From Octopus sinensis (Eukaryota), in NCBI RefSeq assembly GCF_006345805.1, contig NC_043001.1:84444001-84508000 (forward strand): a stretch of DNA of 64,000 nt. Direction: 5' to 3'. Shown here piece by piece: positions 1-56,315 of this stretch. The first letter of the stretch is position 1, and every line of letters starts with the position of its first letter. Below the pieces are notes generated by a model. The model ran no database searches. It was not told the DNA's origin and was given only the letters and a program-made list of their open reading frames with translations. Made by a program: the position numbers and the translations under genes.

Positions 1-385
1 GTGTGAATGTATAGGTTAAAGGGATTGCTATATAAGTATGTTATAGTGTTTAGTAAAGGGAGGTTTTATCATTTATGTTTTGTGAGTTTTAGCTTATCAT
101 GGTAGTTTTATAAAAGAATCCATTCATAATTTTTGTGTTTATTTGTCTGTGTGGGGTTGAGTGGGTTTTTGGAGTATATGTTGAGGTTTATATGTATGTA
201 TAGGTATGTGTAAGTGGTGTGGGTATTTGTATATGTCGTGGGTGGTGTGTTTACGTGTGTGTATTTGTGTGTGAATGTTTAGGTTAGGGGGATTGCTATA
301 TAGGTATGTTATAGAGTTTAGTAAAGGGAGATTTTATCATTATATGTTTTTATGAGTTTTGGTTTATCATGGTAGGTTTGTTAAG
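1..385 (+). repeat. Degenerate direct repeat, ~270 bp offset
   Basis: 1-110 (GTGTGAATGTATAGGTTAAAGGGATTGCTATATAAGTATGTTATAG..) matches ~270-385 (GTGTGAATGTTTAGGTTAGGGGGATTGCTATATAGGTATGTTATAG..). Confidence 0.8.
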
Positions 386-988
386 GAATTCGTAGTAATT
401 TGTGTCTATTTGCGATGTCTGTTGTTTTATTGCATTGTTTCATTCATAATTTTTAAGTAGTGTTCGTTTTACCAAGTGAATATAATTTTTAATTCCATTT
501 ATTCCATTTCTCCGTTCATAATTTTAAGTGATGTCCGTTTTCTAGAGCGTGAATGTGGGTTGTTATGTGTGTGTGTGTGGGAGTATGAATAAGTATTGTG
601 TTGAAGTATTTAGCTATTTTATTTATTTATAGTTGCCTAGACGTTTTTATGTGTATGTATAGGGATATATATATATAGGTGTGTGATTTAGTGTATTAGT
701 TAGATATGGTTATATATAATTAGGTATATGTGTATGGGTGTATATATAGTTTATTATTATATTATTATTATTTTTTTGTTTTGTTTTATATTTTATATTT
801 TATATTTTATATTTTATATTTATTGTTGATAGGTTTATTTTAGTTTATATATTGTTTATATATTGATTATATATGGATTATATATAGGTTATATATGGAT
901 TATATATTTATATTTTTTCATTCATACTTTAATTATTTTAAAATTATTATTTTTATATTTTAAAATATTGATATTTTAGATTGGAAGT

Positions 989-1030
989 CCACCTGAAGAT
1001 TGTCGATCAGACAAGAAACAATTGTAGTGG
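989..1030 (+). ncRNA. Minimal type I hammerhead ribozyme, intact core
   Basis: CCAC-CTGAAGA-TTGTC(GATCA)GACAA-GAAAC-AATT-GTA-GTGG: 4-bp stem I, 5-bp stem II, palindromic AATT loop on stem III. Predicted cleavage after A1026. Confidence 0.85.
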
Positions 1031-1206
1031 CGGTTTTTTTGACTATTTATTAAAATTTTATGTATTGATTAAGTCTTTCCTTGTTTGTTTTGCAAAATAG
1101 TGGTTTTGTCTCTAATAATATTTTATAATATTTTACTATAAAATTGGATTTAATCCTAAATCTGATTTTTTTCCCTGTAAATTTGGATTTATTCCCTAAT
1201 ATTTAT

Positions 1207-1242
<36 letters not shown>

Positions 1243-1248
<6 letters not shown>

Positions 1249-1560
1249 AAGTTAACTTCTCGAGTCAAACCGACTTATAAGGGCTGGTTTCTCGGTTTCA
1301 TGAGATATATATTCCTCTCTCCGCCTGGATGGGACACCGGTCTGTCGTAGGATTACTCATGTGAAATGAAATGTTTTGCTCAAGATCCAGGAATCGAAAC
1401 CATAATTTTACGATCATGAGTTCAACGTTCTAACCACTAAGCCATGCGCCGTCGCATGAAATAAAGTGTTTTGCTCAAGAACTCAATGCACTGCTTGGTT
1501 CTGGAATTGAAACCACGATCTTGTAATCGTGAATGCAACACTAACAATGAGCCACACGCC
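1243..1560 (-). mobile_element. Two adjacent tRNA-headed SINE copies (family 1)
   Basis: Reverse complement of the GGCGCATGGCTTAGTGGTTAG..GGTTTCGATTCC head at ~1390-1450, and a second decayed head ending ~1560. Confidence 0.75.
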
Positions 1561-1946
1561 TTCACTGACCTTATGGATACAGATATTCTTGTTTTGTTTT
1601 TCGTTTATAATTAAAAGATCCTGTCCTATTTTAGTATCCAGCATGCTACAGTCGTTCACATTCGGGAATATGACAACTGATGATTATAACAGATTAACAC
1701 AATTGAAAAGTATAAATGTCAACGGTATATAAAACTTCAACTGTAAGCATGGGGTTGAAAGTCAGAAAAATTAAACCGTTCGTTTTATAAACTTAAATAA
1801 AAAGAGTATATGATAGAAACGAAAATGACCCCTTATGAGAAATATGTGAGAATGATAAAGGGCGATAACAAACAAAATCTCTGTAGGTAAGCAGCACGTG
1901 TATATGTTTATATTTTTCAGCATGTGTATGTACTATAAATTCATAG

Positions 1947-1984
<38 letters not shown>

Positions 1985-2231
1985 TTGGTGCGTGTATTTG
2001 TTTATCTTTTATTTTTATTACATTCGATAATAATGGAAGGTAAATGTAATAGAAGAGAAGTATACCTCGGTTCAGACATATTTCTATCTCAAAACATGAG
2101 GATCATGATGAAAGATAATAACAACAAAAACAACAGCAATTTACGCGGGAGCAGAGGAAAGAATCAATAATAATAACAACGATGATGATGATGATGATGA
2201 TGATATGATAATAATAATAATAATAATAATG

Positions 2232-2470
2232 TTCTTCTGTCGCCCTTTTCAAGCCTGGCAAGGCTCATGGGCCTTGTTTCCCGATTTCTGTGGCGTATTT
2301 GTACCCCCCAGCTGTACGGGACGCCAGTCCATCGCAACGTTAATCAAGAAACAGGAAGAGAGAGTGAGAGAAAGTTGTGGCGAAAGAGTACACAACGCCC
2401 AGTCTGGGAATCGAAACCGCGATCCTCCGACCGCGAGTTCGCAGCCCTAACCACTGGGCCATTGCACCTC
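2232..2470 (-). mobile_element. tRNA(Arg)-like-headed SINE (family 1, OR-type by inference)
   Basis: Minus strand reads GAGGTGCAATGGCCCAGTGGTTAGGGCTGCGAACTCGCGGTCGGAGGATCGCGGTTTCGATTCCCAGAC, with A and B boxes. Same head as 11533. Confidence 0.85.
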
Positions 2471-2471
2471 C

Positions 2472-2502
<31 letters not shown>

Positions 2503-2527
2503 TAATAATAATGATAATAATAATAAT

Positions 2528-2561
<34 letters not shown>

Positions 2562-2584
2562 TGATGATGATGATGATAACAACC

Positions 2585-2820
2585 CTTTCCATTATAGGCA
2601 CAAAGCCTGAAATTTGGTGGGAGAGGGCCAGTCAATTAGATCGAGTCCAGTACACAACTGATACAAATTTTACTGACACCGAAAGGATGAAAGGACCTAG
2701 GCGGAATTTGAACTCTGAGCGTGGTGACGGGTGAAATATAACTATTTTGCCCGGCGTGTTATCGATTGTGCCAGGACGTCGCCTTAAAAATATAATCAAA
2801 TATAATAATAATTGATGATG

Positions 2821-2864
<44 letters not shown>

Positions 2865-3068
2865 CCTTTCTATTATAGGCACAAGGCCTGAAGTTTTAAG
2901 GGAGTGGACGAATCGATTACATCGACCCAGAATTTCACTAGTACTCAATTTATCGACCCTTGAAAGGATGTAAGGCAAAGTCGACTCGGGGGAATTTGAA
3001 CTCAGAACGTAGCGACGGGCAAAATACGGCTTAGCATCCCGTCCAGCGTGCTAACGGTTCTGCCAGCT
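2585..3068 (-). mobile_element. Two family-3 SINE copies with (ATT)n tails
   Basis: AGTTCAAATTCC..GAGTCGACTTTGCCTT.CATCCTTTC..GGGTCGATAAA core on the minus strand at ~2585-2785 and ~2862-3068, each abutting a TAA/ATT tract. Confidence 0.8.
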
Positions 3069-3077
3069 TAAAAAAAT

Positions 3078-3111
<34 letters not shown>

Positions 3112-3494
3112 ATAATAATAATAATAATAATGATGATGATGATGATAAGATAATAGCAATAACCTTAATATTAAAGACGATGATGATGACGTGGGGGATG
3201 ATGACGCTGTAGAGGTGGTGGTGTCGATGATGATGGTGATGATGAATTGATGAAAGTGACGACAGTGATAGTGATGGTGATGGTGATGATAATGATGACG
3301 ACGATGATGATTATGGGGTGGTGGCGATAATGATGATGAGGATGATAATGATGACGATGATGAAGATGATGGGCTGGTGGTGGTGGTGGTGGTGATGGTG
3401 ATAATGGTGAAGATGATGATGATGATGATAGTGATGACAGCAATAACAACAATAGCAATGATTACAGAAAGAAAAATATTCATCGTGATGTTAC

Positions 3495-3654
3495 CGTTTT
3501 CTCGCACTGATCCTGTAAGATCGGCCTCGGCCTTGTCGATATGTGGTTCTGTATGTAACCCCGGATGACGCCGGTAGTAGTTCGATCGAGGATAAGCATG
3601 GTTTGATCGCGCATGTGAACTCCTTGAATTCCCCATCCTACTTTGTAAAAACCT
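3495..3654 (-). CDS. Candidate alternative N-terminal coding exon A (ATG at 3636: MGNSRSSHARSNHAYPRSNYYRRHPGLHTEPHIDKAEADLTGSVREN)
   Basis: Acceptor ctttccatcag|AG, donor G|GTAACA (phase 1), ATG context AGGATGG. Paralogous to 14390-14555 with 12/22 identical residues in the RSS..SNYY..HPG block, four of them via synonymous third-position changes. Confidence 0.7.
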
Positions 3655-3923
3655 CTGATGGAAAGTGAGTAAGCAGAATGCTGCGATGTGAATTTGTCAG
3701 AGTAAGTGTGTGTGTGTGTGTTTGTATATATAAGTATGGTTTGAAAGAATGTCACTTACTCTATCTGTGCGTATGTGTGTTGAGAAATGATGCTGGTATT
3801 GGCGAACAGGTATGTCTCTGTTATGCTGTAAAAGACTATGCGTGCACAACCGCACGCACACGCAGGCGCGGGTGTGATGTATGTTTGTGTGACCGTATGC
3901 GTGTGTATGTGAATGTGTATGTA

Positions 3924-3961
<38 letters not shown>

Positions 3962-4344
3962 AATGTGCTTTGAATGTGTGTATGTGTCTATTGTATATTA
4001 TTCTATAATAGTGATGGCTGGTCGCATAGGTTCCTCTCAGAGTGCGTGCCTACGTGCGTATTTACTTGCCGCTGTCAGTGTTGGTATTCATGTATATAGT
4101 ATCACAGTATGCATGTGCATGAGTGCGTATGTGTGTGCGCGCACGTATGGATGTGTGTGCGCGCATATGTTTGTGTGTGTGTGTGTGTGTATGTGTGTGT
4201 TGGTGTCAGCATGTTAAGTTTGCAAGTTTCTGTTTTTGAGTTGTTCATGATGCTCGTGATGTTGTTAATACTGTATATATAATTATATAAACATAATATT
4301 ATATATAATTATACATACATGATATATAATTTCATTGTCGTTAC

Positions 4345-4550
4345 TGTTATTGTAGTTGCTATGCAGCTATTGTTGTTTTTGTTGTTGTTGTTGGGTGGAT
4401 TTCAATTACTTTTTACAGACACACACACAGAGTGAAGTAGAAAGAGAGAGAGAGAGGGTGAGAGAGACATGTGGTGCAATAAAATTTGGCATCAAACGGA
4501 TTTCATCTCCTGCCGTACACATCGCAGAACGTGAAGGAATTTAAAGTGCT
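4345..4550 (-). promoter_or_regulatory. Conserved upstream block / putative non-coding first exon of cassette A
   Basis: Homologous to 14888-15085 (GCAATAAAATTTGGCATCAAACGGAT vs GCAATGAATCTTGGCACCAATCGGAT; TGCAGCT(GTT)n). A donor-like GTAA at 4344 aligns with the one at 14887. Confidence 0.45.
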
Positions 4551-4962
4551 TACTAATATATGTATAAACGCAAACACATATATGCATAATTACACACATA
4601 TGCACATATACAGATAGGTACATATACAGATAGGTATATATATATATCATATATATATTATATATAATATATATAGTATATATATATATATATGTACACA
4701 CACATGCACAAATACACACACACATGCATACATGTATATGTGTATATATACAGATGCACCGATATATATATATATACATACACAGACAAAACATATTCAG
4801 AATGTGTGTGTATAAATCTGCATACAGGTGCGTGTGAGAAAGAAAGAGTGAAAGAGGAATCACTGACAGACAGACAGTCAGTCAGTCATACAGAGACAGA
4901 AAAAATGGTTTATTATGTTAATATAAACTCATGTGCCTATATCAATATATATATAATATATA

Positions 4963-5023
<61 letters not shown>

Positions 5024-5242
5024 ATATAATATATGATATACAGCACGGATTTTTGTCAGTGAACAGGTCGCGGATTTTAGCGACGAAAATATTTTGACAA
5101 ATTAAACTTAAATGTGAAGTGAATCGAACGGCTTTTGTGTGTTCTTAAATGGATTATAAACACCTCCACGCTGCAATTGTTTTCGTTTCAGCACACGATC
5201 TCAGATCAAATTACTTGCTATGCGAGTACATCTCCGTAATAT

Positions 5243-5276
<34 letters not shown>

Positions 5277-6245
5277 CAGGTATACCTCATCATACGTCGT
5301 TAATTGGTTCCAGGAGACACGACTTAAATCGAGAAACGACGTAACGATAATAAGCATTCTTAGTTCTGTACTTAATTTTCAATAATACATTGTTAATAAA
5401 AACCTATTTTAAGCTTACAAACAAATGATTTTTCATATTTTAATACAGTACAGTAAAAAAAAAAAGTAATCTAAATTTACGGATACAATTTGGCGGTATT
5501 TTACCGTACATCACGGACGCTTTATTTATAAATGCAGTTTGCAAGAAGACATGATAAAATAAAAGCCTTTTTTAAGCTTAAAAAACAAATTCAGTAATTA
5601 TTATTATTTTACAATAGTAAAAAAAAAAACTAAATTATAAAAAATTTACCAATGCGTACATACAATTTGGTGGCTTACATTGCGGATGTAGATGACTGTG
5701 GATCGTCAACATCAACAGCTGACTCTGGCTGTTCTTGTTGTACGATGCGCTTAAAAAATCGGCTGAGAGTTCCTTGAACTGCCTTCTTTTCCTCAAGGAT
5801 TACACTATTAGGAGCAAAAGCTTCGTGACAAGCCACCATATCCTAGAACCTAAAAAAAACTTTTTCGATACATGCAAATGCTTCCTGGCTCAGGTTCAAC
5901 TTCCTCCTCTTTATTTTGCTGCTCGTGAAGCTCCATCAAATCCTCGTTCGTCAGGAGCTGCTTGTCTTTTTCCAATAAATCTGTGAAATCCTCCTCCTCC
6001 AATTCCATTTCCAGTTCTTTGCTCGTAGTCACCAACGTTTTGATGATGGCAACACTTTCAAATCCCTTAAAATCATTCACGAATTGCTTACATAGCTTCT
6101 TCCATACACCATTAATAGGTGTGCTCTATACATCATTCTGTGCCGCTGCTATGTTCTGTATACCTTGTAGATATCTTATCTCTTCCAAAAGTCACGAAGT
6201 GTGATGGACTCTTTAAGATCAGTTGCAGCTATTGCTTGCCACAGC
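5277..6245 (-). mobile_element. Tigger/pogo DNA transposon, 3' part (pseudogenised transposase C-terminus)
   Basis: TA-CAGGTATACCTC terminus at 5277. Minus-strand QAIAATD..LRDFWK..NGVWKKLCKQFVNDFKGF..ELEMELEEEDFTDLL is typical of Tigger-type transposases. Confidence 0.85.
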
Positions 6246-7345
6246 GTACGCTTCATATGATGGAAGTCTGTCGGGTTCGACAATGACGTCAGTGACGCCG
6301 GAGTTGGGAGCGGAACTCCGGATGCGCAGACGCGGCCACATGTTGGGCAAGTAGCAGTAGAAGTAGGGTTGGGGATTCCCAGGCACGGGTTGAAATGCCG
6401 CAGGCCTCAAAGGAAGTTTTCAGACTATCTTTGTATCGCCTCAGTGGCCTTCCAGGGTTTCTTGCTCCAGAAGCCAGCTCAGAGAAGATCATATTTGGTA
6501 GACGCACGTCATCCATTCGGACTACATGTCCGACACACCGGGGCTGGGTCCTCATGATGAGGTCTTCGATCCCGGCTCTGAGAAGCACCTCAGTGTAAGA
6601 GACTCTGTCCTCCCAGGAAATTCCCATAATTCGTTGCAAGCAGCGGAGGTGGAACTGGTCAAGTTCTCGCATTTGCTTCCTATACAGCGTCCACGTCCCA
6701 CAGCCGTAGAGCAGAGAGGTGATGACGACTGCCATATAGACAACCAGCTTGGTGGAAAGTCTGATGCCTAGTTCGGCCCACACACGTGTCCACAGTCTGC
6801 CAAACGAAGCTCCTGCTTTTGCAAGCCTCATCTTTGTCCATGCTGCAATTTGAGGACAAACAGCTTCCCAGGTATGTAAAGCTCTCCACGTTGTTCAGAG
6901 TTGTGCCCTCAATCTCAATCTGAAGCTCAGGGGGTGTCAGGCCAGGTGCAGGCTGAAGCATCACTTCAGTTTTTCGCAGGCTAATAGTTAGTCCGAAGGC
7001 TTATGCTGCTTCTGCGAGACAGATAGCAAGTTCTTGCAGGTCTGGTTCATTCAATGCTGCAAGCGCACATTCGTCTGCAAAACAGGAAGTCTCTCACTAG
7101 GGCGTCCAAGGCTTTGGTTTTTGCCTTCAGGCGTCTGAGGTCAAAGAATCGGCCGTCACATCTGTAGCGAATAGTGACACCCGCATCAAACTTTGACAGA
7201 GTGCGGAAGAGCATGGTGACAAGCATGAGGCTGAAGAGTGTGGGAGCCATCACGCAGCCTTACTTCACGCCATTGGAGACCGGGAATGGATCAGAGACAT
7301 CTCCGTTTTCCACGATGCAAGCCATCATGCCATCAAACTAACAAT
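6246..7345 (-). mobile_element. RTE (BovB-like) LINE fragment, RT and post-RT region, pseudogenised
   Basis: GVK*GCVMAPTLFSLM..IRYRCDGRFFDLRRLKAKTK..FLFADECAL..KTEVM..VESFTYLGS..RLAKAGASFGRLW..YGCGTWTLY..FHLRCL, with frameshifts. Confidence 0.93.
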
Positions 7346-7760
7346 CCAAAGAGAAAGAAGACTTTCCATTTGTTCAAAGATTTTGCCTCTTTTCTTATCC
7401 ATGACAATGTCATTCATCCCCCCCCCCCCAGGTTTCAGATTTGATATATGCTAAAATCTTGTCCTTATTATGTACAATCATCGATAAACTTGTCCGACTC
7501 ATTCCAAAAGATCGTGCAACTGCTACCACTTTTCACCTTTTTCATGGCGTTTTATCGTAGCCAGTTTATATTCCGGCATTATAGCATGGCGCTTAGCATT
7601 TTCACTGTGAATTTTCTTAGGAGCCATGGGAGCAAAAAAGAAAGTCATAAATGAATGAGAATGAGAAAGTAGCCGATAAACAGACGTAAGCAAATCTGAA
7701 TTCAAAACAATCGCGGGAATCACGAGTGACAATGATACCTAACAGTAGATATTGGAACTG
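7346..7760 (-). mobile_element. Tigger/pogo transposon, 5' part (N-terminal HTH relic)
   Basis: MAPKKIHSENAKRHAIMPEYKLATIKRHEKGEK..KKRGKIFEQMESLLSLWI. Same orientation as 5277-6245. Confidence 0.8.
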
Positions 7761-8008
7761 CAGTGCAATAAGAGCTCCAAAAGACCGATAAATAAGACAA
7801 CACAGGTAATTTTATGATTTCGTATACTAAGCTACACTACTTTATGGTGTGTATCTTAACATTTACTGTACGTGTTTTAATATGATTTTAATGATTTTGA
7901 TATGTGTGTATATATATATTATATATATATAATATACACACATATAAATACATGTATATATATACAATAGATATTACATACGTATACATAAATACATATA
8001 TATATAAT

Positions 8009-8045
<37 letters not shown>

Positions 8046-8078
8046 TTATACACATACATATATTCACATACACATACG

Positions 8079-8118
<40 letters not shown>

Positions 8119-8277
8119 GAATGGTGAAACTATTTTTTCGTTTTCTGAAAAAGCAACGTTTTGGACTTACGAGAGACTTTTTGCATAATACACACACACG
8201 CGCGCACGCGCACACGCACACATATACGTACGCATATGTATACACATATATATACACACGCATATATATACATAAAT

Positions 8278-8560
8278 TCTTTTATTCATTTACTGATTCT
8301 GTCATTTGACTGTGGCCATGTTAGATCACCGCTTTTTTAGTCGAAGAAATTGACCCCTGCACTCATTGTTTGTAAGCCTGGTGCTTATTCTATCGGGTTT
8401 TTTTTTAATGTCAAACTGCTAATTTACAGGGATGTAAACACACCGGCATCGGTTGTCAAGCGATAGTGGTGGTGGTGGTGGGGGGGGCAACACAGTCACA
8501 ACCACACATAGATGTATACATATATTCGATGCGTTTCTTTCAGTTTTCGTCCAACAAATC
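8278..8560 (-). mobile_element. Family-2 SINE, 3' half
   Basis: TTTTATTCATTTACTGATTCTGTCATTTGACTGTGGCCATG..ACACCGGCATCGGTTGTCAAGCGAT..TTTCTTTCAGTTTTCGTC matches the family consensus seen at 35062-35433. Confidence 0.8.
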
Positions 8561-8577
8561 CACTGGCAAGACTCTGG

Positions 8578-8621
<44 letters not shown>

Positions 8622-8946
8622 GCATGTATGTGTATATAACAGTGGATACTCTGCAATACCTCTCTCCATCTCCGCGTGTTTGTGTGTGTGTGCCCGCGCG
8701 CGGGCATGCGCCTGCTTTCCTCTCTACATGTATACATATATTTACACACTCGCATACATATCTGTGCGTTTGTGTTTGTTGTATATGTTTGTACTTGTGC
8801 GCACGTGTTCAGGGGTGTATATTTGCTTACTTACCCATACAACAGTGCATATCCCTGCAGACACGAGCACGCACGCGCAATTCAAACACACACACACACA
8901 ACCAAGCATGCGCGCATGCATACACACACACACGCACACACACACA

Positions 8947-8990
<44 letters not shown>

Positions 8991-8991
8991 G

Positions 8992-9025
<34 letters not shown>

Positions 9026-9029
9026 GCGC

Positions 9030-9549
9030 TTCTCACTATAATTATCACAACAAACCTGCTGGCACTAACACCCCTTACACCTCCATTTACTTCAGCTTCA
9101 CCCGTCGCCACCTCAGTATACATCTCTCCCACCTCCACCACTATCACTCCTACCACCACCACCACCACCACCACCACAACCACCACCACCACTACCATCA
9201 CCACCACTACTACCACCACCACCACCACCACCACCATCACCACTATCACCACCACCACCACCCCACACCACCACCACCAACATCACCACCACCACCACAA
9301 TCCCATTAAAATCGTCACAAACGCACCATCACCACAATCTCCACCACCACCACCATCACCACCACTACTACCACCACCACCACCACCACCACCACCACCA
9401 TCACCTATCACCACCACCACACCACCACCACCACCACCACATCACCACCACCACCACAATCCCATTAAAATCGTCACAAACGCACCATCACCACAATCTC
9501 CACCACCACCACCATCACCACCACTACTACCACCACCACCTCCACCACC

Positions 9550-9581
<32 letters not shown>

Positions 9582-10270
9582 CACTGTCACTGTGACATAC
9601 TCTCATTCTACCCGTATTTCTCACCTTCTCAACAAGCTACATGGGATTTGAAAATGAGAATACATGGTAAGTGCGTTCGCTGACAGGGCAATAGTCGATA
9701 GCGTCACTCTTAGAAAACTGCTGTTGTTGTTGTTGTTGTTGCTGTGGATGGTGGTAGTAGTGATGGTAATAGTTGTGGTGGTGGTGGTGGTGGTGGTGGT
9801 GGTGGTGGCGGCCGTCGTCGTCATCGTTGTGGTAGAGTTGGTGGTGGTAGTGATGGCGATGGTTGTAATTAATATTCATAGTATTTTAAGTAGTCGTGTT
9901 AATTGTCAATGTGGTGTTGATAGAGACGGCGATGTTGATGACGGTGGTGATGGAGATGTTGATTGCGGTGGTGCTGGGGGTGGTGGTGGTGGTGGTGGTG
10001 GTGGTGGAGTTGATAGTTGTGGTGGTGGAAGTGTCGATGGTGGTGTTGTTGGTTGATGATGTTCTAATTGATGTTGGACGTGCTTGTGATGGCGATGTTG
10101 ATGTCGGTGGTGTTGACGGTGGTGTTCGTGGTGGTGGTGATGGTTATGACTGTGGTGGTGGAGTTGATATTGGTAGTGATGGTGATGATGGTGGTGAAGG
10201 CGATGGCGGTTGTAACATCAGTGATGGTGGGGTGGTATTAATGATTGCAGTGATTGTTGTTGTTGGACTT
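9030..10270. repeat. (CAC)n tract, spacer, (GGT/GTG)n tract; internal 159-bp tandem duplication
   Basis: CAC tract ~9125-9585, with AATCCCATTAAAATCGTCACAAACGCACC repeated at ~9299 and ~9458. GGT tract ~9720-10270. Confidence 0.85.
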
Positions 10271-10284
10271 ATTCTTTGTAAGTC

Positions 10285-10578
10285 TAGTAATTATTCTATC
10301 GGTCTCTTTTGCCGAACCGCTAAGTTACGGGCACCTAAACACACCACCATCGGCTGTCAAGCGATGTTGAGGGGGAAAAACACAGACACACAAACACACA
10401 CACACACACATATAGGACAGACTTCTTTCAGTTTCCGTTTACCAAATCCACTCACAAGGCTTTAGTCGGTCCGAGGCTATAGTAGAAGACACTTGCCCAA
10501 GGTGCCACGCAGTGGGACTGAACCCGGAACCATGTGGTTCGTAAGCAAGCTACCTACCACGCAGCCTCTCCTACGCCT
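10285..10578 (-). mobile_element. Family-2 SINE, near full length
   Basis: Head GTGGTAGGTAGCTTGCTTACGAACCACATGGTTCCGGGTTCAGTCCCACTGCGTGGCACCTTGGGCAAGTGTC on the minus strand. Confidence 0.9.
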
Positions 10579-11532
10579 ATTTGGGTATTTTAGCCAATCA
10601 GAAGCGAGTATTTTACGCATCACTGTGGCGATAACACAGTTTCCATAGTAACCAAAGATGCTACGCATGCGCACAGGGTGTGTTATCACCAAATTGAGTG
10701 TTATCAACAAATTCAGAGTACATTGGCATCATTAAAGCGTGGATGCAAACGCTGGTGTGGGGCACATGGTTGATTCCTTGTGAATTTATGTGGAGAAGGA
10801 GATTTAAGAAATACAATATATTTTATAAAATTCTAGAGTGTATTGCAAACTTTCGTTTTTGAATTTTTTGGCTTACAAAGGTCTGTTTTAAGCAATGTTT
10901 TGACTGTTATTTCTAGCAACTCTAGAATGTTCTGAGTTCAAATGCTGACGTGAGTAACTTAATTTTTCAGTCTTCAGTCAATTTAAGTAAGGGTCGTTTA
11001 GACGAAGCTATCAAGCCTCAAAATGTCTAGATTTCTTCTAATACTAAGTATCTATAATGTTCTTCAGTCGTAGAAAGGGTAGTGCAAGGAAATAAAAAAA
11101 TGATATCCGTTTTTAAGTTAGGTCCCTTTAGGCTTCAAGTTCAAATCCTCCAAGATCTACCTCATTTTCCATGCTTTCGGAAGAACTTGATCGATTTTAC
11201 CCCTACTCTCACCACCCACATGCGTGACTATTGTTCTTGTGTTAATAGTCGATAATTACATCGATGACATACATTAGAATCTTTCAAATATCCTTTGTTC
11301 CCAGTGTTATGCTCCTGAATGTATGTATACATAGTACCAGGCTGGATGGGAAATAAATAGAATAACGGGTGTACCCACTAGGCTGATGTGCTCTTGTATC
11401 TTAATGTTAGAGCGTGTTTAGATGCAGCAGTAGCCCACTGAATTTGAGCATTATTATAATTACTTCAGAATTAAAAGATTCTACCTCAATATGAATCCAG
11501 ATAGGTTATGTATGTATACATACAACATAGAA

Positions 11533-11826
11533 GAGGCGCAATGGCCCAGTGGTTAGGGCAGCGGACTCGCGGTCGTAGGATCGCGGTTTCGATTCCCAGA
11601 CCGGGCGTTGTGAGTGTTTATTGAGCGAAAACACCTAAAAAGCTCCACGAGGCTCCGGTAGGGGTGGGGATCCCTGCTGTACTCTTTCACCACTCTTTCT
11701 CTCTTTCTTCTGTTGGCCTGCTCGCTTAGCCAGCGGGGTGGCATCATTCGAAGGCTAAAACAATGCGAACGCATTGTGACCAGCGATGTGTAGCAACATC
11801 TGATGGTCTGGTCGGTCACGTGATCA
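11533..11826 (+). mobile_element. tRNA(Arg)-like-headed SINE (family 1)
   Basis: GAGGCGCAATGGCCCAGTGGTTAGGGCAGCGGACTCGCGGTCGTAGGATCGCGGTTTCGATTCCCAGACC followed by a non-tRNA body. Confidence 0.9.
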
Positions 11827-12245
11827 CATACAACATACAACAAGCGCCTCCGTAACTTAGCGGTTCGGCTGAAGGACCGATAGATTAAGTACTAGGCTTA
11901 CAAAGTATAAGTCCTGGGGTCGTTTTATTCGACTAAAGGCGGTGCTCCATCATGGCCACAGTCATATGACTGGGACAATTAAAAGAATAGAAGAACATAT
12001 ATATATATATATTTATATATATATGAGACCAAAGTGTACATACGCCGCTATATTTTATATATAAATATTACAAAAATGGGACAAGACCGCAAAACATACA
12101 GACAGGTGAAACAAAAAAAGAAAAAGGAAAATAAAATATCCAAACAGACGATACAAGGAAACCAAGGACGGATCATTCGGAGTTTTCTCTCCTCAGTTGA
12201 GTTCCAGATTTTCTTTGCAATTTCGGCTGTTTATACTCGAGATTG

Positions 12246-12292
<47 letters not shown>

Positions 12293-12296
<4 letters not shown>

Positions 12297-12494
12297 CTCT
12301 TTTTTTACTTGTTTCAGTCATTTGACTGTAGCCATGCTGGAGCACCACCTTTAGTCGAACAAATCGAACCCAGGACTTATTCTTTGTAAGCCTAGTACTT
12401 ATTCTATCGATCTATTTTGCCGAACCGCTAGCTTACGGGGACATAAACACAATACTATCGGTTGTCAAGCGATGTTGGGGAGACAAACACACAC

Positions 12495-12543
<49 letters not shown>

Positions 12544-12672
12544 CATATATACGACGGGCTTCATTCAGTTTCCGTCTACCAAATCCACTCACAAGGCTTT
12601 GGTTGACCCGAGGCTATAGTAGAAGACAGTTACGCAAGGTGCCACGCAGTGGGAATGAACCCGGAACCACGG
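12293..12672 (-). mobile_element. Family-2 SINE with internal (CA)n(TA)n
   Basis: CTTTTTTTACTTGTTTCAGTCATTTGACTGTAGCCATGCTGGAGCACC..GGTGCCACGCAGTGGGAATGAACCCGGAACCAC. Confidence 0.9.
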
Positions 12673-12681
12673 GTTATATAC

Positions 12682-12718
<37 letters not shown>

Positions 12719-12949
12719 ATATATTATATGTGTGCAAATTTATGCGTCCCATAAAAATAGAAGGTAAAGCATGCATAAATACTGCATTCTTGGGCTCATA
12801 TATCTGTTTCCATATAAAAATGTTGATAAAGATTTTGATAGCGAAGTGGATGAAGCTGATGATGAAATGTAATACGATTGATAATAAAGCTATGACTATT
12901 AACAACCACAACAACAATAGCAACTACAACAATAATAATAATAATAATA

Positions 12950-13162
12950 ATGAGGCCTGGATTTTCTGAGGAGGGGATTAAGTCGATTACTTTTGACCCC
13001 AGTACTTTACTATTCTATTACTTTATTTACCGATCCCAAAGGGTAAAAGGTAAACTCGACCTCGGCGGAATTTGAACTAAGAACGTAACGGCAGATGAAA
13101 TACCGCCCGGTGTGCTAACGATTCTGCCAGCTCGCTGCCTTAACAACAGCAGCACTACTACA

Positions 13163-13260
<98 letters not shown>

Positions 13261-13580
13261 TGATAATAATCTTTTTCATTATAGGCACAGGGCCTGAAAT
13301 TTGCGGGGAGGGGGTAACTGACAATTATTTAATTGACCCCCGAAAGGCTGAAAGGCAAAGTCGACCTCGGTGGAATATGAACTAAGTGTTTCGTCCAGCG
13401 TGCTAACGATTCTGTCAGCTCGCTATCTTATTAATATTAATCATACTAATGGTTTCAAATTTTTGCACAAGGTCAGCAATCAGAAAGGTAAAATTGATTT
13501 CGGTGGAATTTGAAATCAGAACGGAAAAACGGATGAGATGCCGTTCAGAATTTTGCGATATTGCCAGCTCGCCCGCTTAA
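12950..13580 (-). mobile_element. Cluster of family-3 SINE copies interleaved with (TAA)n/(CTA)n
   Basis: Repeated CGACCTCGG(C/T)GGAATTTGAACT..GCTAACGATTCTGCCAGCTCGC at ~13055-13140, ~13360-13430 and ~13495-13575. Confidence 0.8.
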
Positions 13581-13591
13581 TAATAATAATG

Positions 13592-13624
<33 letters not shown>

Positions 13625-13684
13625 GTAGTAGTCGTACTAGTAGTAGTAATGATGATGATGATGATGATGATAGTAATAATGATG

Positions 13685-13747
<63 letters not shown>

Positions 13748-13807
13748 GAAAATACTCGGCGAGAAAATTTGAAGAAAGAAGGAAAAATAATAATAATAAT
13801 AATAAAT

Positions 13808-14300
13808 ACCCTGATGTAGTACCAGGCAGTGGCTCTCAAGGCTATTGCTTTGTCTTGGTATAAAGGAAGGGCTACAACAAATATTCTGCTCAATACCACA
13901 GATCTGTTGTCAGTTGTTTGACCTTAACCAGCCGCGCATATCTCTCACTGGCTGGCGAAATGTGCATCTTTGATCACGAGCAGAAGTAGTGGGGGAGCAT
14001 CATAGCCATGTGTTGAGAGGAATTCTTTGGGGTTTGAATTATTCTGCCCTGGAAACAAGGGTGTTTTGTTCATCATCCTTAAAAAATCTTATTCAGGGAG
14101 AATTTGAACAGGATGGGCTACTCAACCCTAAGTAAATTCTAATTGGGGTCCTCCCGCAATGTCATGCACTGTTTATCTTGATATGAGATCGCTATGTCAC
14201 GCACACATGGTTGTGATGGATGACGGGTAGTGATGGTAGTTATATTGAGCTTCATATATTTGTACCCCAGTGTCACTTTGATGACATGAACTGCTCTCTG
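13808..14300. mobile_element. Unclassified ~500-bp insertion embedded in a (TAA)n tract
   Basis: Higher-complexity block with sharp ends (CCCTGATGTAGTACCAGGCAGTGG..CCCAGTGTCACTTTGATG..CTCTCTGACTC), flanked on both sides by TAA repeats. Confidence 0.4.
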
Positions 14301-14389
14301 ACTCAATTAAAAAAATATTAATAATAATAACAGCAACAACAACAGCAACAACAATAATTTTAAAAAATGGTATTTCATTGTGACATTAC

Positions 14390-14555
14390 CCTCTACTTCA
14401 TCCGATCCTTCATCCAAACCTTCGAAAAAGAGCACAGTTCTGCTAACGTAATTTCGGCGTCCCGGATGGCTGTTATAGTAGTTCGATACAGGGGATGAAA
14501 CATTTGACGTTGTAAGAGAACTCCTTTCATTTTCATTCTCCATTTTGCTTTTACT
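14390..14555 (-). CDS. Candidate alternative N-terminal coding exon B (ATG at 14543: MENENERSSLTTSNVSSPVSNYYNSHPGRRNYVSRTVLFFEGLDEGSDEVE)
   Basis: Acceptor acatctgtcag|AG, donor G|GTAATG (phase 1), ATG context AAAATGG. In both paralogues the RSS motif starts exactly 10 codons after the acceptor. Confidence 0.7.
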
Positions 14556-14887
14556 CTGACAGATGTCGAGAAGCAGAGAGTAGAGACGTGAAGCAGCAGT
14601 GCTATATGAGTATAAATGCGAATATCTAAGAAGTGCCTCTTCCCTTGTATGCTTGGGTTAGGGAGGGGTGAGATGTGGTTGAAAGTCGGAATTGGCAAAC
14701 AGATATGTTTGCAGTTGGATTTCTGTGAATATATATAATATATATATATATATATATGAGCTTAGTGAATATATATGTGTGTATATGTGTGTGTGTGTGT
14801 ATGTGCGTGTGTGTGTATGTTTGTATGAGGAGTGAAGGGTGTGAGATGAGTGATTTGTTTATGGTGAGGAAGTGGATACGTTATTAC

Positions 14888-15085
14888 ATTTGTTGTAGTA
14901 TCTGCTGCAGCTGTTTTGTTGTTGTTGTTGTTGTTGTTGTTGTTAGGTGAGGTCTGAGTTTGATTTCACAGGCAGAGAGACAGAAAGGAAGAGAGAGGGA
15001 GCAATGAATCTTGGCACCAATCGGATAATTAGATATCAACTACCGTATCCATGATTGTACATCAGAGAGGTTTAATGATGCTATA
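14888..15085 (-). promoter_or_regulatory. Conserved upstream block / putative non-coding first exon of cassette B
   Basis: Homologous to 4345-4550. Contains CCAAT (15017-15021) and a donor-like GTAATA at 14887. Confidence 0.45.
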
Positions 15086-15409: not shown

Positions 15410-15829
15410 GTATTTGTACATGTGTGTGTATGTGTGCGCGTGTAGTTATATATGCCAAGGCAATCGAAACGATTTAAGGTAAGATCTAAAGTAACGGTAT
15501 GATTTTTTTCTTATGTACTTTTTGTTGCTAAATCCTCCGAATTCCTCGACATTCTTCAAAAGTATTGTTGGATTTACCTGTCATGCATGAGGATTTATTT
15601 GCCTGAGATATGTATTGTGCTTACATGTACAGGTATCTGATGAACATTTAACCAAAATCTTTTAATGCTGAGTGTAGCTGTGTGCATATATATGAGTATA
15701 TATATATATATATGTTAATACAGCATTAACAAGGTGAAAAATGCCAACTGAACATCTGAAAAAATTTACCAATTAATAAAAGCTACAAAAAAAACGCATG
15801 TATGTATATGCTATTGCAATTGAATTGGA

Positions 15830-16108
15830 TTTGATAGACGGAAACTGAAAGAAGCCCGTTGTATATATGTATATATATATGTATGTGTGTGTATATATAT
15901 GCGTGTCTGTGTTTGTCCCCCCAACATCGCTTGACAACCGATGCTGGTGTGTTTACGTCCCCGTAACTTAGCGGTTCGGCAAAACAGACCGATATAATAA
16001 GTACTAGGCTTACAAAGAATAAGTCATGGGGCTGATTTCCGCGACTAAAGGCAGTGCTCCAGCATGGCTACAGTCACATGACTGAAACAAGTAAAAGAGT
16101 AAAAGAGT
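15830..16108 (+). mobile_element. Family-2 SINE, 5'-truncated
   Basis: GGATTTGATAGACGGAAACTGAAAGAAGCCCG..(TA/TG)n..CCGATGCTGGTGTGTTTACGTCCCCGTAACTTAGCGGTTCGGC..GAAACAAGTAAAAGAGTAAAAGAG. Confidence 0.9.
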
Positions 16109-16550
16109 ATATATATATTTAAGAAAGAAAAATATGTAAGAAGCGCACAGGAGGTTTGTATAATAAAAGTCATGCTAATATTAAGATCATAATGAAACAA
16201 AGAGTTGTATTATAACATTATATAATGAACTGGGTGTAGCGGTTTCGCGCCTTACGCTTATCAAACTTCAAAGCTCTCAGATTTTTGTACAGAGAGTATT
16301 TTTGTTGTACGCGTAACCTGTACTGAAATCTGAGACCTTGGAAGTTTGATAAGTGTATTCCATGTTTATTATATAATGTTGTAATACAACTCTTTGTTTT
16401 ATTATGATTTTAATATTAGCATAAATTTTATTATACAAACCTCATGCGCGTTTTTATATATTTTCTTTCTTAAATATCTACAACAAGATCTGACACATTT
16501 ACGTTTTATATATGGAAGAAAGTCAAGGTAAAATGTGCTACAATAATTTT

Positions 16551-17100: not shown

Positions 17101-17214
17101 TATATATATATATAGATGTAGGTATGTACATATATGTATGTATATATGCAATGTTTTATTTATTAATTTGTTATTATATATATATATATGTATCTATGGA
17201 TATCTGTGTGTATG

Positions 17215-17266
<52 letters not shown>

Positions 17267-17269
17267 TTT

Positions 17270-18010
17270 GTATAATATAACTAACTTTCATGCACTAACA
17301 CCTTTATTCCGCCACTTACAACAGCTGCACCCGTTGCCATCACGCATACAACTGCCTCACCACCACCACCACCACCACCACCACCACCACCACCACCACC
17401 ACTACAACCACCACTGTGATACACCCTTTTCTACCCATATATCTGATCTTCAACTTCTACTCAACAAGCTATATAAAATAGAGTAGGTGTGTGTTCAGGA
17501 TAATAACCGACATGCTCTAAGGAAGCTACTGATGTTATTTTGGAGGACTGCTGCTGCTACTGGTACTGCCGCCAATACTGCTGGTGCTACTACTACCCCT
17601 GCTCCTGCTGCTGTCACCGCCGCTGCTACTTCATATGTTGCCGCTAGTTGTGATGGCCGTGCTAATAATGTTGTTGCTGTTGATGATAGTGGTTGTGGTG
17701 GTGATATTGATGGTGGTTTTGGTGGTGTCGGAGGTGTTGGTGTTGAAGTGGTGGTGGTGGTGTTGGGTGCTGAAGTGATGGTGGTTGTGGTGGTGATAGT
17801 AGTGATGGTAGTAGTTGTGGTTGTGGTAGAGGTGGTGATTGTGGTGGTGGTAGTAGTTGTGGTTGGTGTAGTAGCTGTGGTAGTGATGGTGGTTGTTGTG
17901 GTGGTAGAGGTTGTGGTGGTGATAGTGGTGATGGTAGTGGTGGTTGTGGTTGTGGTGGTAGTGGTTGTGGTAGTTGTGTTGGTTGTGGTGGTGGTAGTAG
18001 AGGGTTGTTA
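17270..18010. repeat. Second (CAC)n, spacer, (GGT)n module, homologous to 9030-10270
   Basis: Shared unique flanks: GCACTAACACC..CAGCT(G/T)CACCCGT(T/C)GCCA before the CAC tract, and CACTGTGA..TTCTACCC(A/G)TAT..CTCAACAAGCTA after it. Confidence 0.75.
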
Positions 18011-18257
18011 TTGGTTCATTTTGTTTTATTTATTTTATAATATACATTTTGATTTTTGTTTCTATTGATTTATTTTGATATTCTTATAATTTGAGTCTCT
18101 ATGAATCTACGTGTTGCTCTTTACCAAGGGAATGCTAGAAATGGAATATGGGTATAAAGTAAGGAGAAATTATAGGTGAACCAGCAGTACTTTCAATGCC
18201 ACTCAGATGCGGACGTGTAAGCACATAGCTATTGCTGGATAGTATTTATATAAGATC

Positions 18258-19874: not shown

Positions 19875-20494
19875 ACGTATACCGGTGCGTATGTGTGTGT
19901 GTGTGTGTGTAAATATCTACCAATATTTGCTTGCATAGTGCCTGTATGCATATAGTTGAATGCACGTAAGTATTCAAGCATTTCATGGCTCCCCACCCGA
20001 CAGCACTTTTCATAGACATAATTAAATACATATGTAACTAAATATATACATGCATGCATACACACATACATACATACATACATACATACATACATACATA
20101 CATACATACATACGTACATACATACATACATACATGCATGCATGCATATATGTATGGACGTAGACTCCCATCCATCTCTGCATACATACATAAGTATGTA
20201 TTTATTTGAAACTAAGGCCTCATTCTGTTGATTCTCTATGTTTTCACGTGGCTGTTCTTCACAATGACTGAATTCAAGTATCACTTTCCAGATATGAAAG
20301 TTTTTTTCAATCGACATGTTTGTTTGGATCTCTGGCTGAACATTCTATCACAACACCTCTTGTTCTGTTCTTGGTCGCATAGTGTTCTGTCCCATTAGTG
20401 TTGGGGACAGGTAGTGTGTAGCTGGTCAACGTTGCACTTTACAGAGGATTTCTATTACAATTAACGCGAATATGCTTTTCGGCGCTGTTCGGCT

Positions 20495-30364: not shown

Positions 30365-30408
30365 CACTATATATATATCTATATATATATATATATATAA
30401 TATATATA

Positions 30409-30465
<57 letters not shown>

Positions 30466-35433: not shown

Positions 35434-35511
<78 letters not shown>

Positions 35512-37420: not shown

Positions 37421-37439
37421 ATATATATATATATATATG

Positions 37440-56282: not shown

Positions 56283-56315
<33 letters not shown>

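What the first reader, a model, noticed from the sequence alone, without database searches (positions are those of the whole stretch)
3495..15085. Tandemly duplicated promoter/5'-exon cassettes encoding paralogous alternative N-termini
Seen: 3480-4550 and 14380-15085 (minus strand) are homologous over three parts: an upstream non-coding block with an aligned GTAA donor, an acceptor cag|AG, and an ATG-bearing exon ending G|GTAA in phase 1. The peptides align as RSSHARSNHAYPRSNYYRRHPG vs RSSLTTSNVSSPVSNYYNSHPG, with synonymous changes at TCA/TCT, AAC/AAT, TAC/TAT and GGG/GGA, which indicates protein-level constraint. No duplicated downstream exon is visible between the copies. Inference: one gene with duplicated, diverging promoter plus N-terminus modules spliced to shared exons beyond the left edge, rather than two whole-gene paralogues.
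Basis: partly seen in the sequence, partly recalled or inferred. Interest (0 to 1): 0.85.

Follow-up and report, generated by a model that had tools for sequence, protein, structure and literature searches.

The report
Duplicated start-codon exon module, octopus-like gene
Two diverged copies, 10.9 kb apart, of the front end of a gene lie on the minus strand of this octopus-like DNA; both still look like usable protein-start exons, but whether either is used, and what gene they belong to, cannot be told from this window.

Summary
Copy A (exon-like 3654..3495, ATG 3636) and copy B (14555..14390, ATG 14543) on the minus strand are each other's only significant match in the 64 kb window. tblastn gives E=2e-5 at 58% over 24 aa, and there is no third copy. 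The upstream block U, the 72-nt core of the exon and the first 25 nt after the donor each beat 300/300 random window segments. The acceptor region is only marginally similar, and the 3' half of the exon is not similar at all.

Only frame 0 is open in both copies. Both have an A(-3)/G(+4) ATG and both end G|GTAA in phase 1. Exon GC is 51%/43% against about 35% around them. Evidence for protein-level constraint is weak: pN/pS 0.47 on 24 codons, P about 0.02, and the two ATGs are not at homologous positions.

The duplicated unit is larger than a "cassette". A further colinear block (9000-10225 vs 17200-18020) shows that at least 3.6 kb was copied, so similarity in non-coding sequence alone does not mark a promoter.

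No duplicated downstream exon lies between the copies. Neither peptide occurs in searched protein databases that do hold octopus proteomes.

The alternative-first-exon reading is the best fit but is untested. If true, it is a new member of a known kind.

The parts
3495..3654 (-). Copy A exon-like segment E(A). It runs from cag|AG (first base 3654) to G|GTAACA (last base 3495). ATG at 3636 in an A(-3)/G(+4) context. The 47 codons + 1 nt (phase 1) encode MGNSRSSHARSNHAYPRSNYYRRHPGLHTEPHIDKAEADLTGSVREN-G.
   Evidence: Sequence read. Frames and GC of 51%. Only significant partner is copy B.
14390..14555 (-). Copy B exon-like segment E(B). It runs from cag|AG (first base 14555) to G|GTAATG (last base 14390). 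ATG at 14543 in an A(-3)/G(+4) context. The 51 codons + 1 nt (phase 1) encode MENENERSSLTTSNVSSPVSNYYNSHPGRRNYVSRTVLFFEGLDEGSDEVE-G.
   Evidence: Sequence read. Frame 0 is the only frame open in both copies; frame 1 has a TAG just before the donor in B and frame 2 has 5 stops in B. GC is 43%.
3559..3630 (-). Conserved 72-nt (24-codon) core of E(A). Its partner is 14460-14531. 47/72 nt and 14/24 aa are identical.
   Evidence: pN/pS is 0.47 in frame 0 (Jukes-Cantor-corrected dN/dS 0.30); the corrected ratio is 1.7 in frame 1.
14460..14531 (-). Conserved 72-nt core of E(B).
3470..3494 (-). First 25 nt after the E(A) donor. It is conserved with 14365-14389 (GTAAcaTCACgATGAA against GTAAtgTCACaATGAA), and a (TTG/TTA)n microsatellite follows in both copies.
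   Evidence: 0/300; 14/17.
14365..14389 (-). First 25 nt after the E(B) donor.
3655..3692 (-). Pyrimidine-rich tract ending in cag before E(A). It reads as an acceptor, or alternatively TCAGAG could be an initiator. Partner is 14556-14592.
   Evidence: Similarity is only marginal on its own.
14556..14592 (-). Pyrimidine-rich tract ending in cag before E(B).
3792..3814 (-). Conserved island CATACCTGTTCGCCAATACCAGC, which contains GCCAAT, about 140-160 nt upstream of cag|AG. Partner is 14685-14707 (18/23). Calling it a possible CCAAT/NFI-type site is inference only.
   Evidence: (top hit 15 against 14, marginal).
14685..14707 (-). Partner of the GCCAAT island in copy B (CATATCTGTTTGCCAATTCCGAC).
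4345..4552 (-). Upstream block U(A). In order it holds a conserved core (4473-4522, including TGATGCCAAATTTTATTGCACC), a CT-rich tract, a (CAA)n run, AGCTGCA..ACTACAA, and GTAA after 4345. No ATG-led frame runs into the GTAA. It is either a non-coding leader exon or a regulatory block.
   Evidence: (0/300).
14888..15080 (-). Upstream block U(B), with the same order of elements. GTAA follows 14888.
9000..10225 (-). Far-upstream duplicated block X(A). In + coordinates the order is (AC)n, island X2 (9041-9112), (CCA)n, island X1 (9588-9639), unique sequence, (GTT/GTG)n. It shows the duplicated unit reaches at least this far.
   Evidence: (top hits 22 against 14 and 30 against 16).
17200..18020 (-). 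Far-upstream duplicated block X(B), with the same order of microsatellites and islands (X2 17272-17341, X1 17412-17471).

Best explanation
An old tandem segmental duplication, now with a period of about 10.9 kb, copied the 5' end of a minus-strand gene. The copied piece was at least 3.6 kb: a far-upstream block X, a leader or regulatory block U, and a short start-codon exon E. As far as the window shows, the exons further downstream were not copied.

Both copies of E still have what a first coding exon needs:
- a good-context ATG;
- one shared open frame;
- a conserved 24-residue motif (N-x-RSS-x3-SN-x3-P-x-SNYY-x2-HPG);
- a G|GTAA donor in phase 1, followed by about 20 conserved intron bases.

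The most likely working is as follows. Each copy is transcribed from its own upstream region. Each E donor joins the same next exon left of position 1. This gives two isoforms of one protein with paralogous but diverged N-termini. Copy A starts MGNSRS, which fits the N-myristoylation pattern G-{EDRKHPFYW}-x2-[STAGCN]-{P}. Copy B starts with the acidic MENENE and cannot be myristoylated.

Shown: the homology, its extent, the exon-like anatomy, the frame and phase, and the absence of a private downstream exon in 4546-14389.

Inferred: transcription, the promoters, splicing to a shared exon, myristoylation, and that both copies are in use.
For: - Each copy is the other's only partner. tblastn gives E about 2e-5, and neither tblastn nor a six-frame profile search finds a third copy. 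Protein shuffles reach the score 0/2000 times.
- The colinear blocks U, the E core and the donor flank each score 0/300 against random window segments.
- Frame 0 is the only frame open in both copies. Exon GC is 51%/43% against about 35% in the surroundings.
- The lengths from acceptor to donor (160 and 166 nt) differ by a multiple of 3.
- In the core, pN/pS is 0.47 in frame 0 (Jukes-Cantor dN/dS 0.30), whereas the corrected ratio is 1.7 in frame 1. Permutation P is 0.01-0.02, and 68% of neutral simulations create a stop.
- Only three ATG ORFs in the window, on either strand, have a polyY-AG upstream and a phase-1 G|GTAA donor at codons 40-60. They are A, B and one microsatellite translation.
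- No exon-like similarity or Pfam domain lies between the copies or in 1-3494.
- The upstream region was co-duplicated, so whatever promoter lay within about 2.7 kb of E was copied too.
Against: - There is no transcript evidence.
- Neither peptide shares even three 5-mers with any of 5.8 billion cluster representatives. That database holds O. bimaculoides and O. vulgaris proteins. The profile search of 1.84 billion representatives gave only spurious repeat hits. One caveat applies: isoforms that differ only at the N-terminus collapse into one 90% cluster.
- The 3' 40% of the exon is not conserved (83/300).
- The ATGs are not positionally homologous.
- The non-coding islands X1 and X2 are more alike (about 75%) than the exon core (65%). 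The exon's similarity therefore needs no selection to explain it.
- The U donors are weak.
- The acceptor-like site of E(A) would trap transcripts coming from B into a premature stop.
Confidence: 0.45

Rival explanations
1. This is a partial 5' duplication in which only one copy is used. The other is a decaying relic (pseudo-exon) that happens still to be open.
For: - Half of the exon is unalignable (83/300).
- The ATGs are shifted by two codons.
- Copy A has all three frames open, so openness there is cheap.
- 15% of all ATGs in this microsatellite-rich window have at least 47 open codons.
- Non-coding islands are as well conserved as the exon, or better.
- Neither peptide is annotated anywhere.
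Against: - Both copies keep the ATG context, the frame, the phase-1 donor and the donor-flanking intron bases.
- pN/pS is below 1 only in frame 0.
- 68% of neutral simulations of the 72-nt core alone would already have made a stop.
Confidence: 0.2
2. Neither copy is coding. The blocks are non-coding remnants of an old segmental duplication (intronic, intergenic or lncRNA), and the shared ORF and splice-like motifs are coincidence picked out by eye.
For: - Loose exon-like ORFs occur 19 times in the window.
- GTAA and polyY-AG are common in AT-rich DNA.
- There is no database support and no Rfam or Pfam hit.
- The exon core is no better conserved than blocks X and U.
Against: - Both members of the only clear paralogous pair would have to be exon-like in the same frame, with the same phase and aligned boundaries. 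My rough estimate of that joint chance is about 0.01.
- Exon GC is raised.
- The substitution pattern favours frame 0.
Confidence: 0.15
3. These are two separate tandem paralogous genes. Copy B has its own small downstream exons hidden in 4546-14389, or reads into a different gene. Copy A's exons lie left of the window.
For: Only 3.5 kb downstream of A is visible, so homologues of B-private exons could lie off the window. Small exons without Pfam domains would be missed.
Against: The 9.8 kb between the copies is made of a LINE fragment, a pogo-like fragment, SINEs and microsatellites. It has no non-repeat ORF and no similarity to 1-3494 beyond repeats.
Confidence: 0.08
4. These are mutually exclusive internal exons fed from one shared upstream exon and promoter further right in the window or beyond. 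U and X would then be intronic.
For: - Both E copies have a credible polypyrimidine-AG acceptor at the same distance (30 nt) from the conserved core, and in phase 0.
- The distances from acceptor to donor differ by 6 nt.
- Including both exons would give a premature stop, as is typical of mutually exclusive pairs.
Against: - The pair is 10.9 kb apart and the whole upstream region is co-duplicated.
- No docking/selector-type complementarity to the conserved U core was found.
- No upstream coding exon is visible, and the in-frame sequence between acceptor and ATG is not conserved.
Confidence: 0.07

Closest known systems
Multiple-variable-first-exon clusters (vertebrate clustered protocadherins, UGT1A, GCNT2). 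These are tandem arrays of paralogous first exons, each with its own promoter, spliced to common constant exons (abstracts of PMC1885805 and PMC3325998).
   Same: Tandem paralogous start-codon exons lie on one strand. Each carries a 5' splice donor in the same phase and a co-duplicated upstream region. No constant exons are duplicated between them.
   Different: - There are only two members.
- The exons are tiny (47-51 codons of low-complexity N-terminus) rather than whole-domain exons.
- Each has an acceptor-like site, and possibly a separate non-coding leader exon, which classical variable first exons lack.
- The constant exons, the promoters and their usage are not seen.
Tandem exon duplication giving mutually exclusive alternative exons (Kondrashov & Koonin 2001; Letunic, Copley & Bork 2002; cited from my own knowledge).
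   Same: The exons are homologous neighbours of nearly equal length with identical phases. Joint inclusion would break the frame.
   Different: - The spacing is 10.9 kb.
- The start codon lies inside the exon.
- Several kb of upstream sequence were duplicated with it.
- No shared upstream exon is visible.
Genes with alternative promoters that give a myristoylated and a non-myristoylated N-terminus (for example c-Abl 1b/1a and the alternative first exons of the PKA catalytic subunit; from my own knowledge).
   Same: One N-terminus (copy A, MGNSRS) fits the myristoylation pattern and the other (copy B) does not. Both are short first coding exons joined to a common body.
   Different: In those genes the alternative first exons are not paralogues of each other. 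Here myristoylation is only a pattern match.
Unannotated alternative first exons in octopus genes, for example the statocyst-specific exon 1b of Myo-VIIa found by SPLASH (bioRxiv 10.1101/2022.06.24.497555, read).
   Same: It shows that current octopus annotations miss alternative first exons. Absence from the protein databases is therefore weak evidence against the reading.
   Different: It is a different gene. No paralogy between its first exons was mentioned in the passages read.

Membership tests
Multiple-variable-first-exon cluster (Pcdh/UGT1 type) | A tandem array of paralogous first exons on one strand | tested here: met
   There are two copies 10.9 kb apart, and each is the other's only match. 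With no third copy, it is a pair and not an array.
Multiple-variable-first-exon cluster (Pcdh/UGT1 type) | Each variable exon is preceded by its own promoter | not testable with these tools
   The upstream blocks U and X are co-duplicated. There are no TSS data, and the GCCAAT, TATA-like and TCAGAG motifs are only pattern matches.
Multiple-variable-first-exon cluster (Pcdh/UGT1 type) | The variable exon has a 5' splice donor but no functional acceptor | tested here: inconclusive
   The donors G|GTAACA and G|GTAATG are present and in phase 1. A good polypyrimidine-cag acceptor-like site also precedes each exon.
Multiple-variable-first-exon cluster (Pcdh/UGT1 type) | All variable exons splice to one shared set of constant exons | not testable with these tools
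   The next exon would lie left of position 1. Nothing exon-like is seen in 1-3494.
Mutually exclusive tandem-duplicated exons | Homologous adjacent exons with the same phases at both ends | tested here: met
   The acceptor is in phase 0 and the donor in phase 1 in both copies. The lengths are 160 and 166 nt.
Mutually exclusive tandem-duplicated exons | Shared constitutive exons on both sides | not testable with these tools
   No upstream shared exon was identified, and the downstream exon is off the window.
Whole-gene tandem paralogues | Downstream exons are duplicated along with the first exon | tested here: not met
   There is no non-repeat similarity between 1-3494 and 4546-14389, and no ORF or Pfam domain lies between the copies. 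The test is limited to the 3.5 kb visible downstream of copy A.
Interspersed repeat / transposable element | Many dispersed copies, TE protein domains or terminal repeats | tested here: not met
   There are only two copies, colinear and in the same orientation, within the window. No Pfam hit was found for the peptides. Genome-wide copy number could not be tested.
Protein-coding exon under purifying selection | dN/dS clearly below 1 over the exon, and indels in multiples of three | tested here: inconclusive
   pN/pS is 0.47 on 24 codons (P about 0.02). The rest of the exon is unalignable. The net length difference is 6 or 12 nt, which is in frame.

The most novel reading that the evidence does not exclude
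An octopod gene, unannotated at its 5' end, has independently evolved a small 'variable first exon / constant body' architecture. Two paralogous promoter-plus-N-terminus modules would be used alternatively: one giving a myristoylatable MGNSRS start (membrane-targeted isoform), the other an acidic MENENE start. They would share a conserved RSS..SN..P.SNYY..HPG motif of unknown function.
Probability: 0.3. Interest if true: 0.4.

Novelty: new member of a known kind. Interest (0 to 1): 0.25.

Why it matters
If both modules are used, this would be a clean, small example of how a partial tandem duplication of a gene's 5' end creates alternative N-termini, and possibly a switch between myristoylated and non-myristoylated forms, in a cephalopod, where isoform diversity is of interest. 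It would also flag a 5' end that searched octopus protein sets lack. The principle is well known from vertebrate and insect genes, the gene is unidentified, and nothing here shows expression. For now it is an annotation lead, not a discovery.

Tried and rejected
1. Identifying the gene from the peptides. The search for homologous proteins found no candidate for B or A. The profile of both against 1.84 billion representatives gave two translated tandem repeats and a triple cytochrome-b5 protein matching only through 'S/T-x-Y-L-x-x-HPGG'. I rejected that hit because the peptides lack the second Gly and the hydrophobic b5 core.
2. Finding the locus elsewhere. The look-up of encoding contigs with three window ORFs returned nothing on record. 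The JGI metagenome scan with back-translated patterns gave 184 pattern hits with none confirmed. An exact degenerate DNA pattern found nothing.
3. Positive control for the database. The LINE ORF finds O. bimaculoides and O. vulgaris proteins, so the negative results are meaningful, apart from the isoform-clustering caveat.
4. Non-coding RNA. Rfam at the gathering threshold gave no hit in the window, and ARAGORN found no tRNA.
5. A third copy. tblastn, a six-frame hmmsearch and DNA tile ranking found none.
6. Docking/selector RNA pairing for mutually exclusive splicing. The best complementarity to the U core is 17-18/22 with G-U allowed, and it lies inside GT-rich microsatellite, so I rejected it.
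7. Neuropeptide-precursor reading of 'HPG-RR' in copy B. I rejected it because there is no signal peptide and copy A has no dibasic site.
8. U as a coding exon. No ATG-led frame reaches its GTAA in either copy.
9. The repeat finder and unmasked blastn were swamped by microsatellites, so I replaced them with empirical tile and segment tests.
Full report
**What the window is**

The window is AT-rich (GC 0.25-0.46 per 2 kb). It is packed with di- and trinucleotide microsatellites and with short interspersed repeats that recur 5-10 times within it. It has no Rfam family at gathering score and no tRNA gene.

A LINE reverse-transcriptase fragment at 6292-6894(-) has Octopus bimaculoides (64% identity) and Octopus vulgaris (76-81% over part) as its best named relatives. 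No host-gene exon with a recognisable domain was found on the minus strand of 1-14389.

**Check of the observation**

| | Copy A | Copy B |
|---|---|---|
| Acceptor-like site | catcag\|AG, first exon base 3654 | tgtcag\|AG, first exon base 14555 |
| ATG | 3636 | 14543 |
| Donor | G\|GTAACA, last exon base 3495 | G\|GTAATG, last exon base 14390 |
| ATG to donor | 142 nt, phase 1 | 154 nt, phase 1 |
| Upstream GTAA | after 4345 (ACA\|GTAACG) | after 14888 (AAT\|GTAATA) |

The similarity is not chance:
- Each peptide finds only the other copy in a tblastn of the window (E about 2e-5). The next hits are translated microsatellites at E>0.06.
- No protein shuffle out of 2000 reaches the score.
- At DNA level, copy B is the top hit for the exon among 632 tiles on both strands (score 23 against a next best of 13).

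The window is full of simple repeats, so I used the window itself as the null. The table gives the number of 300 random same-length segments that reach the observed alignment score.

| Segment | Random segments reaching the score |
|---|---|
| U block | 0/300 |
| 72-nt exon core | 0/300 |
| First 25 nt after the donor | 0/300 |
| 3' part of the U-E spacer (GCCAAT island, pyrimidine tract, cag) | 5/300 |
| First 30 nt of the exon | 12/300 |
| Last 58/64 nt of the exon | 83/300 |

The three-part homology is therefore real. The acceptor region counts only through colinearity, and the 3' 40% of the exon is not recognisably homologous.

**Is E a coding exon?**

For:
- Frame 0 is the only frame open from ATG to donor in both copies. 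Frame 1 ends in a TAG just before the donor in B, and frame 2 has five stops in B.
- Both ATGs have A at -3 and G at +4, with no ATG between the cag|AG and the start.
- The acceptor-to-donor lengths (160 and 166 nt) differ by a multiple of three.
- Exon GC is 51% and 43%, against about 35% around them.
- In the 72-nt core, pN/pS is 0.47 (Nei-Gojobori, Jukes-Cantor dN/dS 0.30) in frame 0, whereas the corrected ratio is 1.7 in frame 1.
- Random placement of the same number of differences gives as low a ratio in 2% of trials and as many identical residues in 0.9%. It creates a stop in 68% of trials.
- Under a strict exon-like filter (at least 47 open codons, polyY-AG within 40 nt upstream, phase-1 G|GTAA at codons 40-60), the window has three candidates on both strands. 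They are A, B and one microsatellite translation.

Against:
- The constraint signal rests on 24 codons chosen because they align in this frame.
- Copy A is open in all three frames.
- 15% of all ATGs in this window have at least 47 open codons, and 19 loosely exon-like ORFs exist.
- The two ATGs are not homologous. The distance from cag|AG to the conserved AGGAGTTC is exactly 30 nt in both copies, but the ATG lies 12 nt before that motif in A and 18 nt before it in B.

I put the probability that both E copies are, or recently were, real coding exons at about 0.6.

**The duplication is larger than a cassette**

A tile scan of 1-14389 against the whole window, followed by targeted tests (top hits 22 against 14 and 30 against 16), shows a further colinear, same-strand block: 9000-10225 in the A unit against 17200-18020 in the B unit.

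Both units keep the same order of parts in + coordinates:
1. (AC)n
2. island X2 (9041-9112 against 17272-17341, about 75% identical)
3. (CCA)n
4. island X1 (9588-9639 against 17412-17471)
5. unique sequence
6. (GTG/GTT)n

At least 3.6 kb (B unit) or 6.7 kb (A unit) was therefore copied. The extra 2.7 kb in A is accounted for by the LINE fragment and a pogo-like fragment at about 5.4-7.8 kb.

Two consequences follow.
- Similarity of non-coding blocks is expected from ancestry and does not by itself indicate promoters. The islands X1 and X2 are in fact more alike than the exon core.

On the minus strand X2 ends in CTGAA|GTAAAT (A) and CTGTT|GTAAGT (B). U begins right after (TA)nAG in both copies. 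A three-exon leader X-U-E is therefore conceivable but untested.

**What lies between and downstream**

tblastx and blastn of 1-3494 against 4546-14389 give only SINE and microsatellite matches. Pfam finds nothing but a CENP-B_N (pogo-type HTH) match at 7413-7532. There is thus no sign of private downstream exons for copy B. Only 3.5 kb downstream of copy A is visible, so this is a limited test.

**External evidence**

- Neither peptide shares three 5-mers with any representative of the 5.8-billion-cluster protein collection. That collection does contain octopus proteomes.
- A two-sequence profile against 1.84 billion representatives returned only two translated repeats and a cytochrome-b5 repeat protein matching through HPGG, which I regard as spurious.
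- Metagenome scans and exact-product look-ups found nothing.
- The negative results are weakened by two points. Isoforms that differ only in a short N-terminus fall into one 90% cluster. And octopus annotations are known to miss alternative first exons (Myo-VIIa exon 1b, bioRxiv 10.1101/2022.06.24.497555).

**Mechanism**

The best-supported reading (confidence 0.45) is that a partial tandem duplication of a gene's 5' end left two transcription-start and N-terminus modules in series. Each E donor (phase 1, split codon G|nn in both) would join the same next exon left of position 1.

Copy A's MGNSRS start matches the N-myristoylation pattern and copy B's MENENE start cannot. A difference in localisation is therefore a reasonable, purely inferred, functional distinction.

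One mechanistic difficulty remains. The pyrimidine-cag site of E(A) lies in the path of any transcript that starts at B. Joining 14390 to 3654 would read G-AG GTT TTT ACA AAG TAG and terminate. A productive B isoform must skip that site. Alternatively the site is an initiator (TCAGAG) and not an acceptor, which would make the locus resemble classical variable first exons more closely.

The rivals are set out with their tests in the Rival explanations section:
- one copy is a relic (0.2);
- both are non-coding remnants (0.15);
- two separate genes (0.08);
- mutually exclusive internal exons (0.07).

**Comparison with known systems, and verdict**

The architecture works like multiple-variable-first-exon loci (PMC1885805, PMC3325998) and like tandem exon duplication, both long known.

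For membership, only 'tandem paralogous first exons with donors in the same phase' could be shown. The promoters and the shared constant exons are untestable here, and 'no acceptor' is doubtful.

The finding is a correct observation with a plausible but unproven interpretation. If true, it is a new member of a known kind in an unidentified gene.

Noticed in passing
window 9000-10225 and 17200-18020: A second colinear duplicated block lies upstream of both cassettes. Both copies keep the same order of (AC)n, island X2, (CCA)n, island X1, unique sequence and (GTG)n. On the minus strand X2 ends in a donor-like GTAAAT (A) or GTAAGT (B). Its nature (exon, regulatory element or neutral remnant) is unknown.
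   Followed up: partly
window 3483-3755(-) and 14396-14761(-): A second reading frame (+1 relative to the proposed CDS) is also open across the exon-like segment in both copies (91 and 122 codons stop to stop). In copy B it ends in a TAG just before the donor. Its dN/dS is 1.7, so I do not take it as coding.
   Followed up: yes
window 6292-7259(-): A LINE-type reverse-transcriptase fragment in several frame-shifted ORF pieces. Its best named relatives are Octopus bimaculoides and O. vulgaris proteins ('RNA-directed DNA polymerase from mobile element jockey'). Pfam found no hit on the pieces.
   Followed up: partly
window 7413-7532(-), perhaps with 5853-6125(-): A CENP-B_N (pogo/Tigger-type HTH) match exactly at the Pfam gathering score (21.2 bits). 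This suggests a pogo-like transposon remnant flanking the LINE fragment. Together they explain the extra 2.7 kb between U and X in copy A.
   Followed up: partly
window 57046-57360(+): By eye, this ORF piece (...FFHQDNARPHTA...LPYSPDISPSYYLF...) resembles the catalytic C-terminal part of mariner-type transposases. That is my own recollection; the Pfam scan gave no supporting hit.
   Followed up: partly
window 2500-3160, 12950-13680, 28645-28800, 39888-40043, 40490-40885, 48887-49109, 60908-61384, 62337-62505: A SINE-like family with the core ...TTATAGGCACAAGGCCTGAAATTT..., usually preceded by (TAA)n. Copies lie 0.3-1.4 kb downstream of both E exons in roughly colinear positions, at 87-88% identity. 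They are more alike than the exons, so they are probably later insertions or ordinary family-level similarity.
   Followed up: partly
window 8234-8580, 10265-10586, 11850-12675, 15826-16118, 35063-35469, 37271-37440, 50280-50931, 56298-56470: A second interspersed repeat family in both orientations, at 75-90% identity.
   Followed up: no
window 20439-20750(-) and 22081-22377(-): Two ORFs 1.6 kb apart share an identical stretch of about 50 residues (ITINCNGLPITNLYEYLIIIFLAFEKVNFFRNIASLNDLCNVIQCYSFYFYSL). This points to a very recent local duplication.
   Followed up: no
window 1054-1240 vs 54187-54372; 1261-1620 and 2221-2562 vs 30001-30480: Low-copy repeats (86% and about 75-86% identity) link the left end of the window with distant positions on the same strand. 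Their nature is unknown.
   Followed up: no
window 16115-16233 and 16360-16477: An inverted repeat of about 120 nt at 89% identity, with arms about 125 nt apart, just upstream of copy B's U block.
   Followed up: no
window 37733-38149(+): A 138-aa ORF containing ...YFDFAKTFDMVNH... This looks like another reverse-transcriptase fragment (my own reading). Pfam found no hit.
   Followed up: partly
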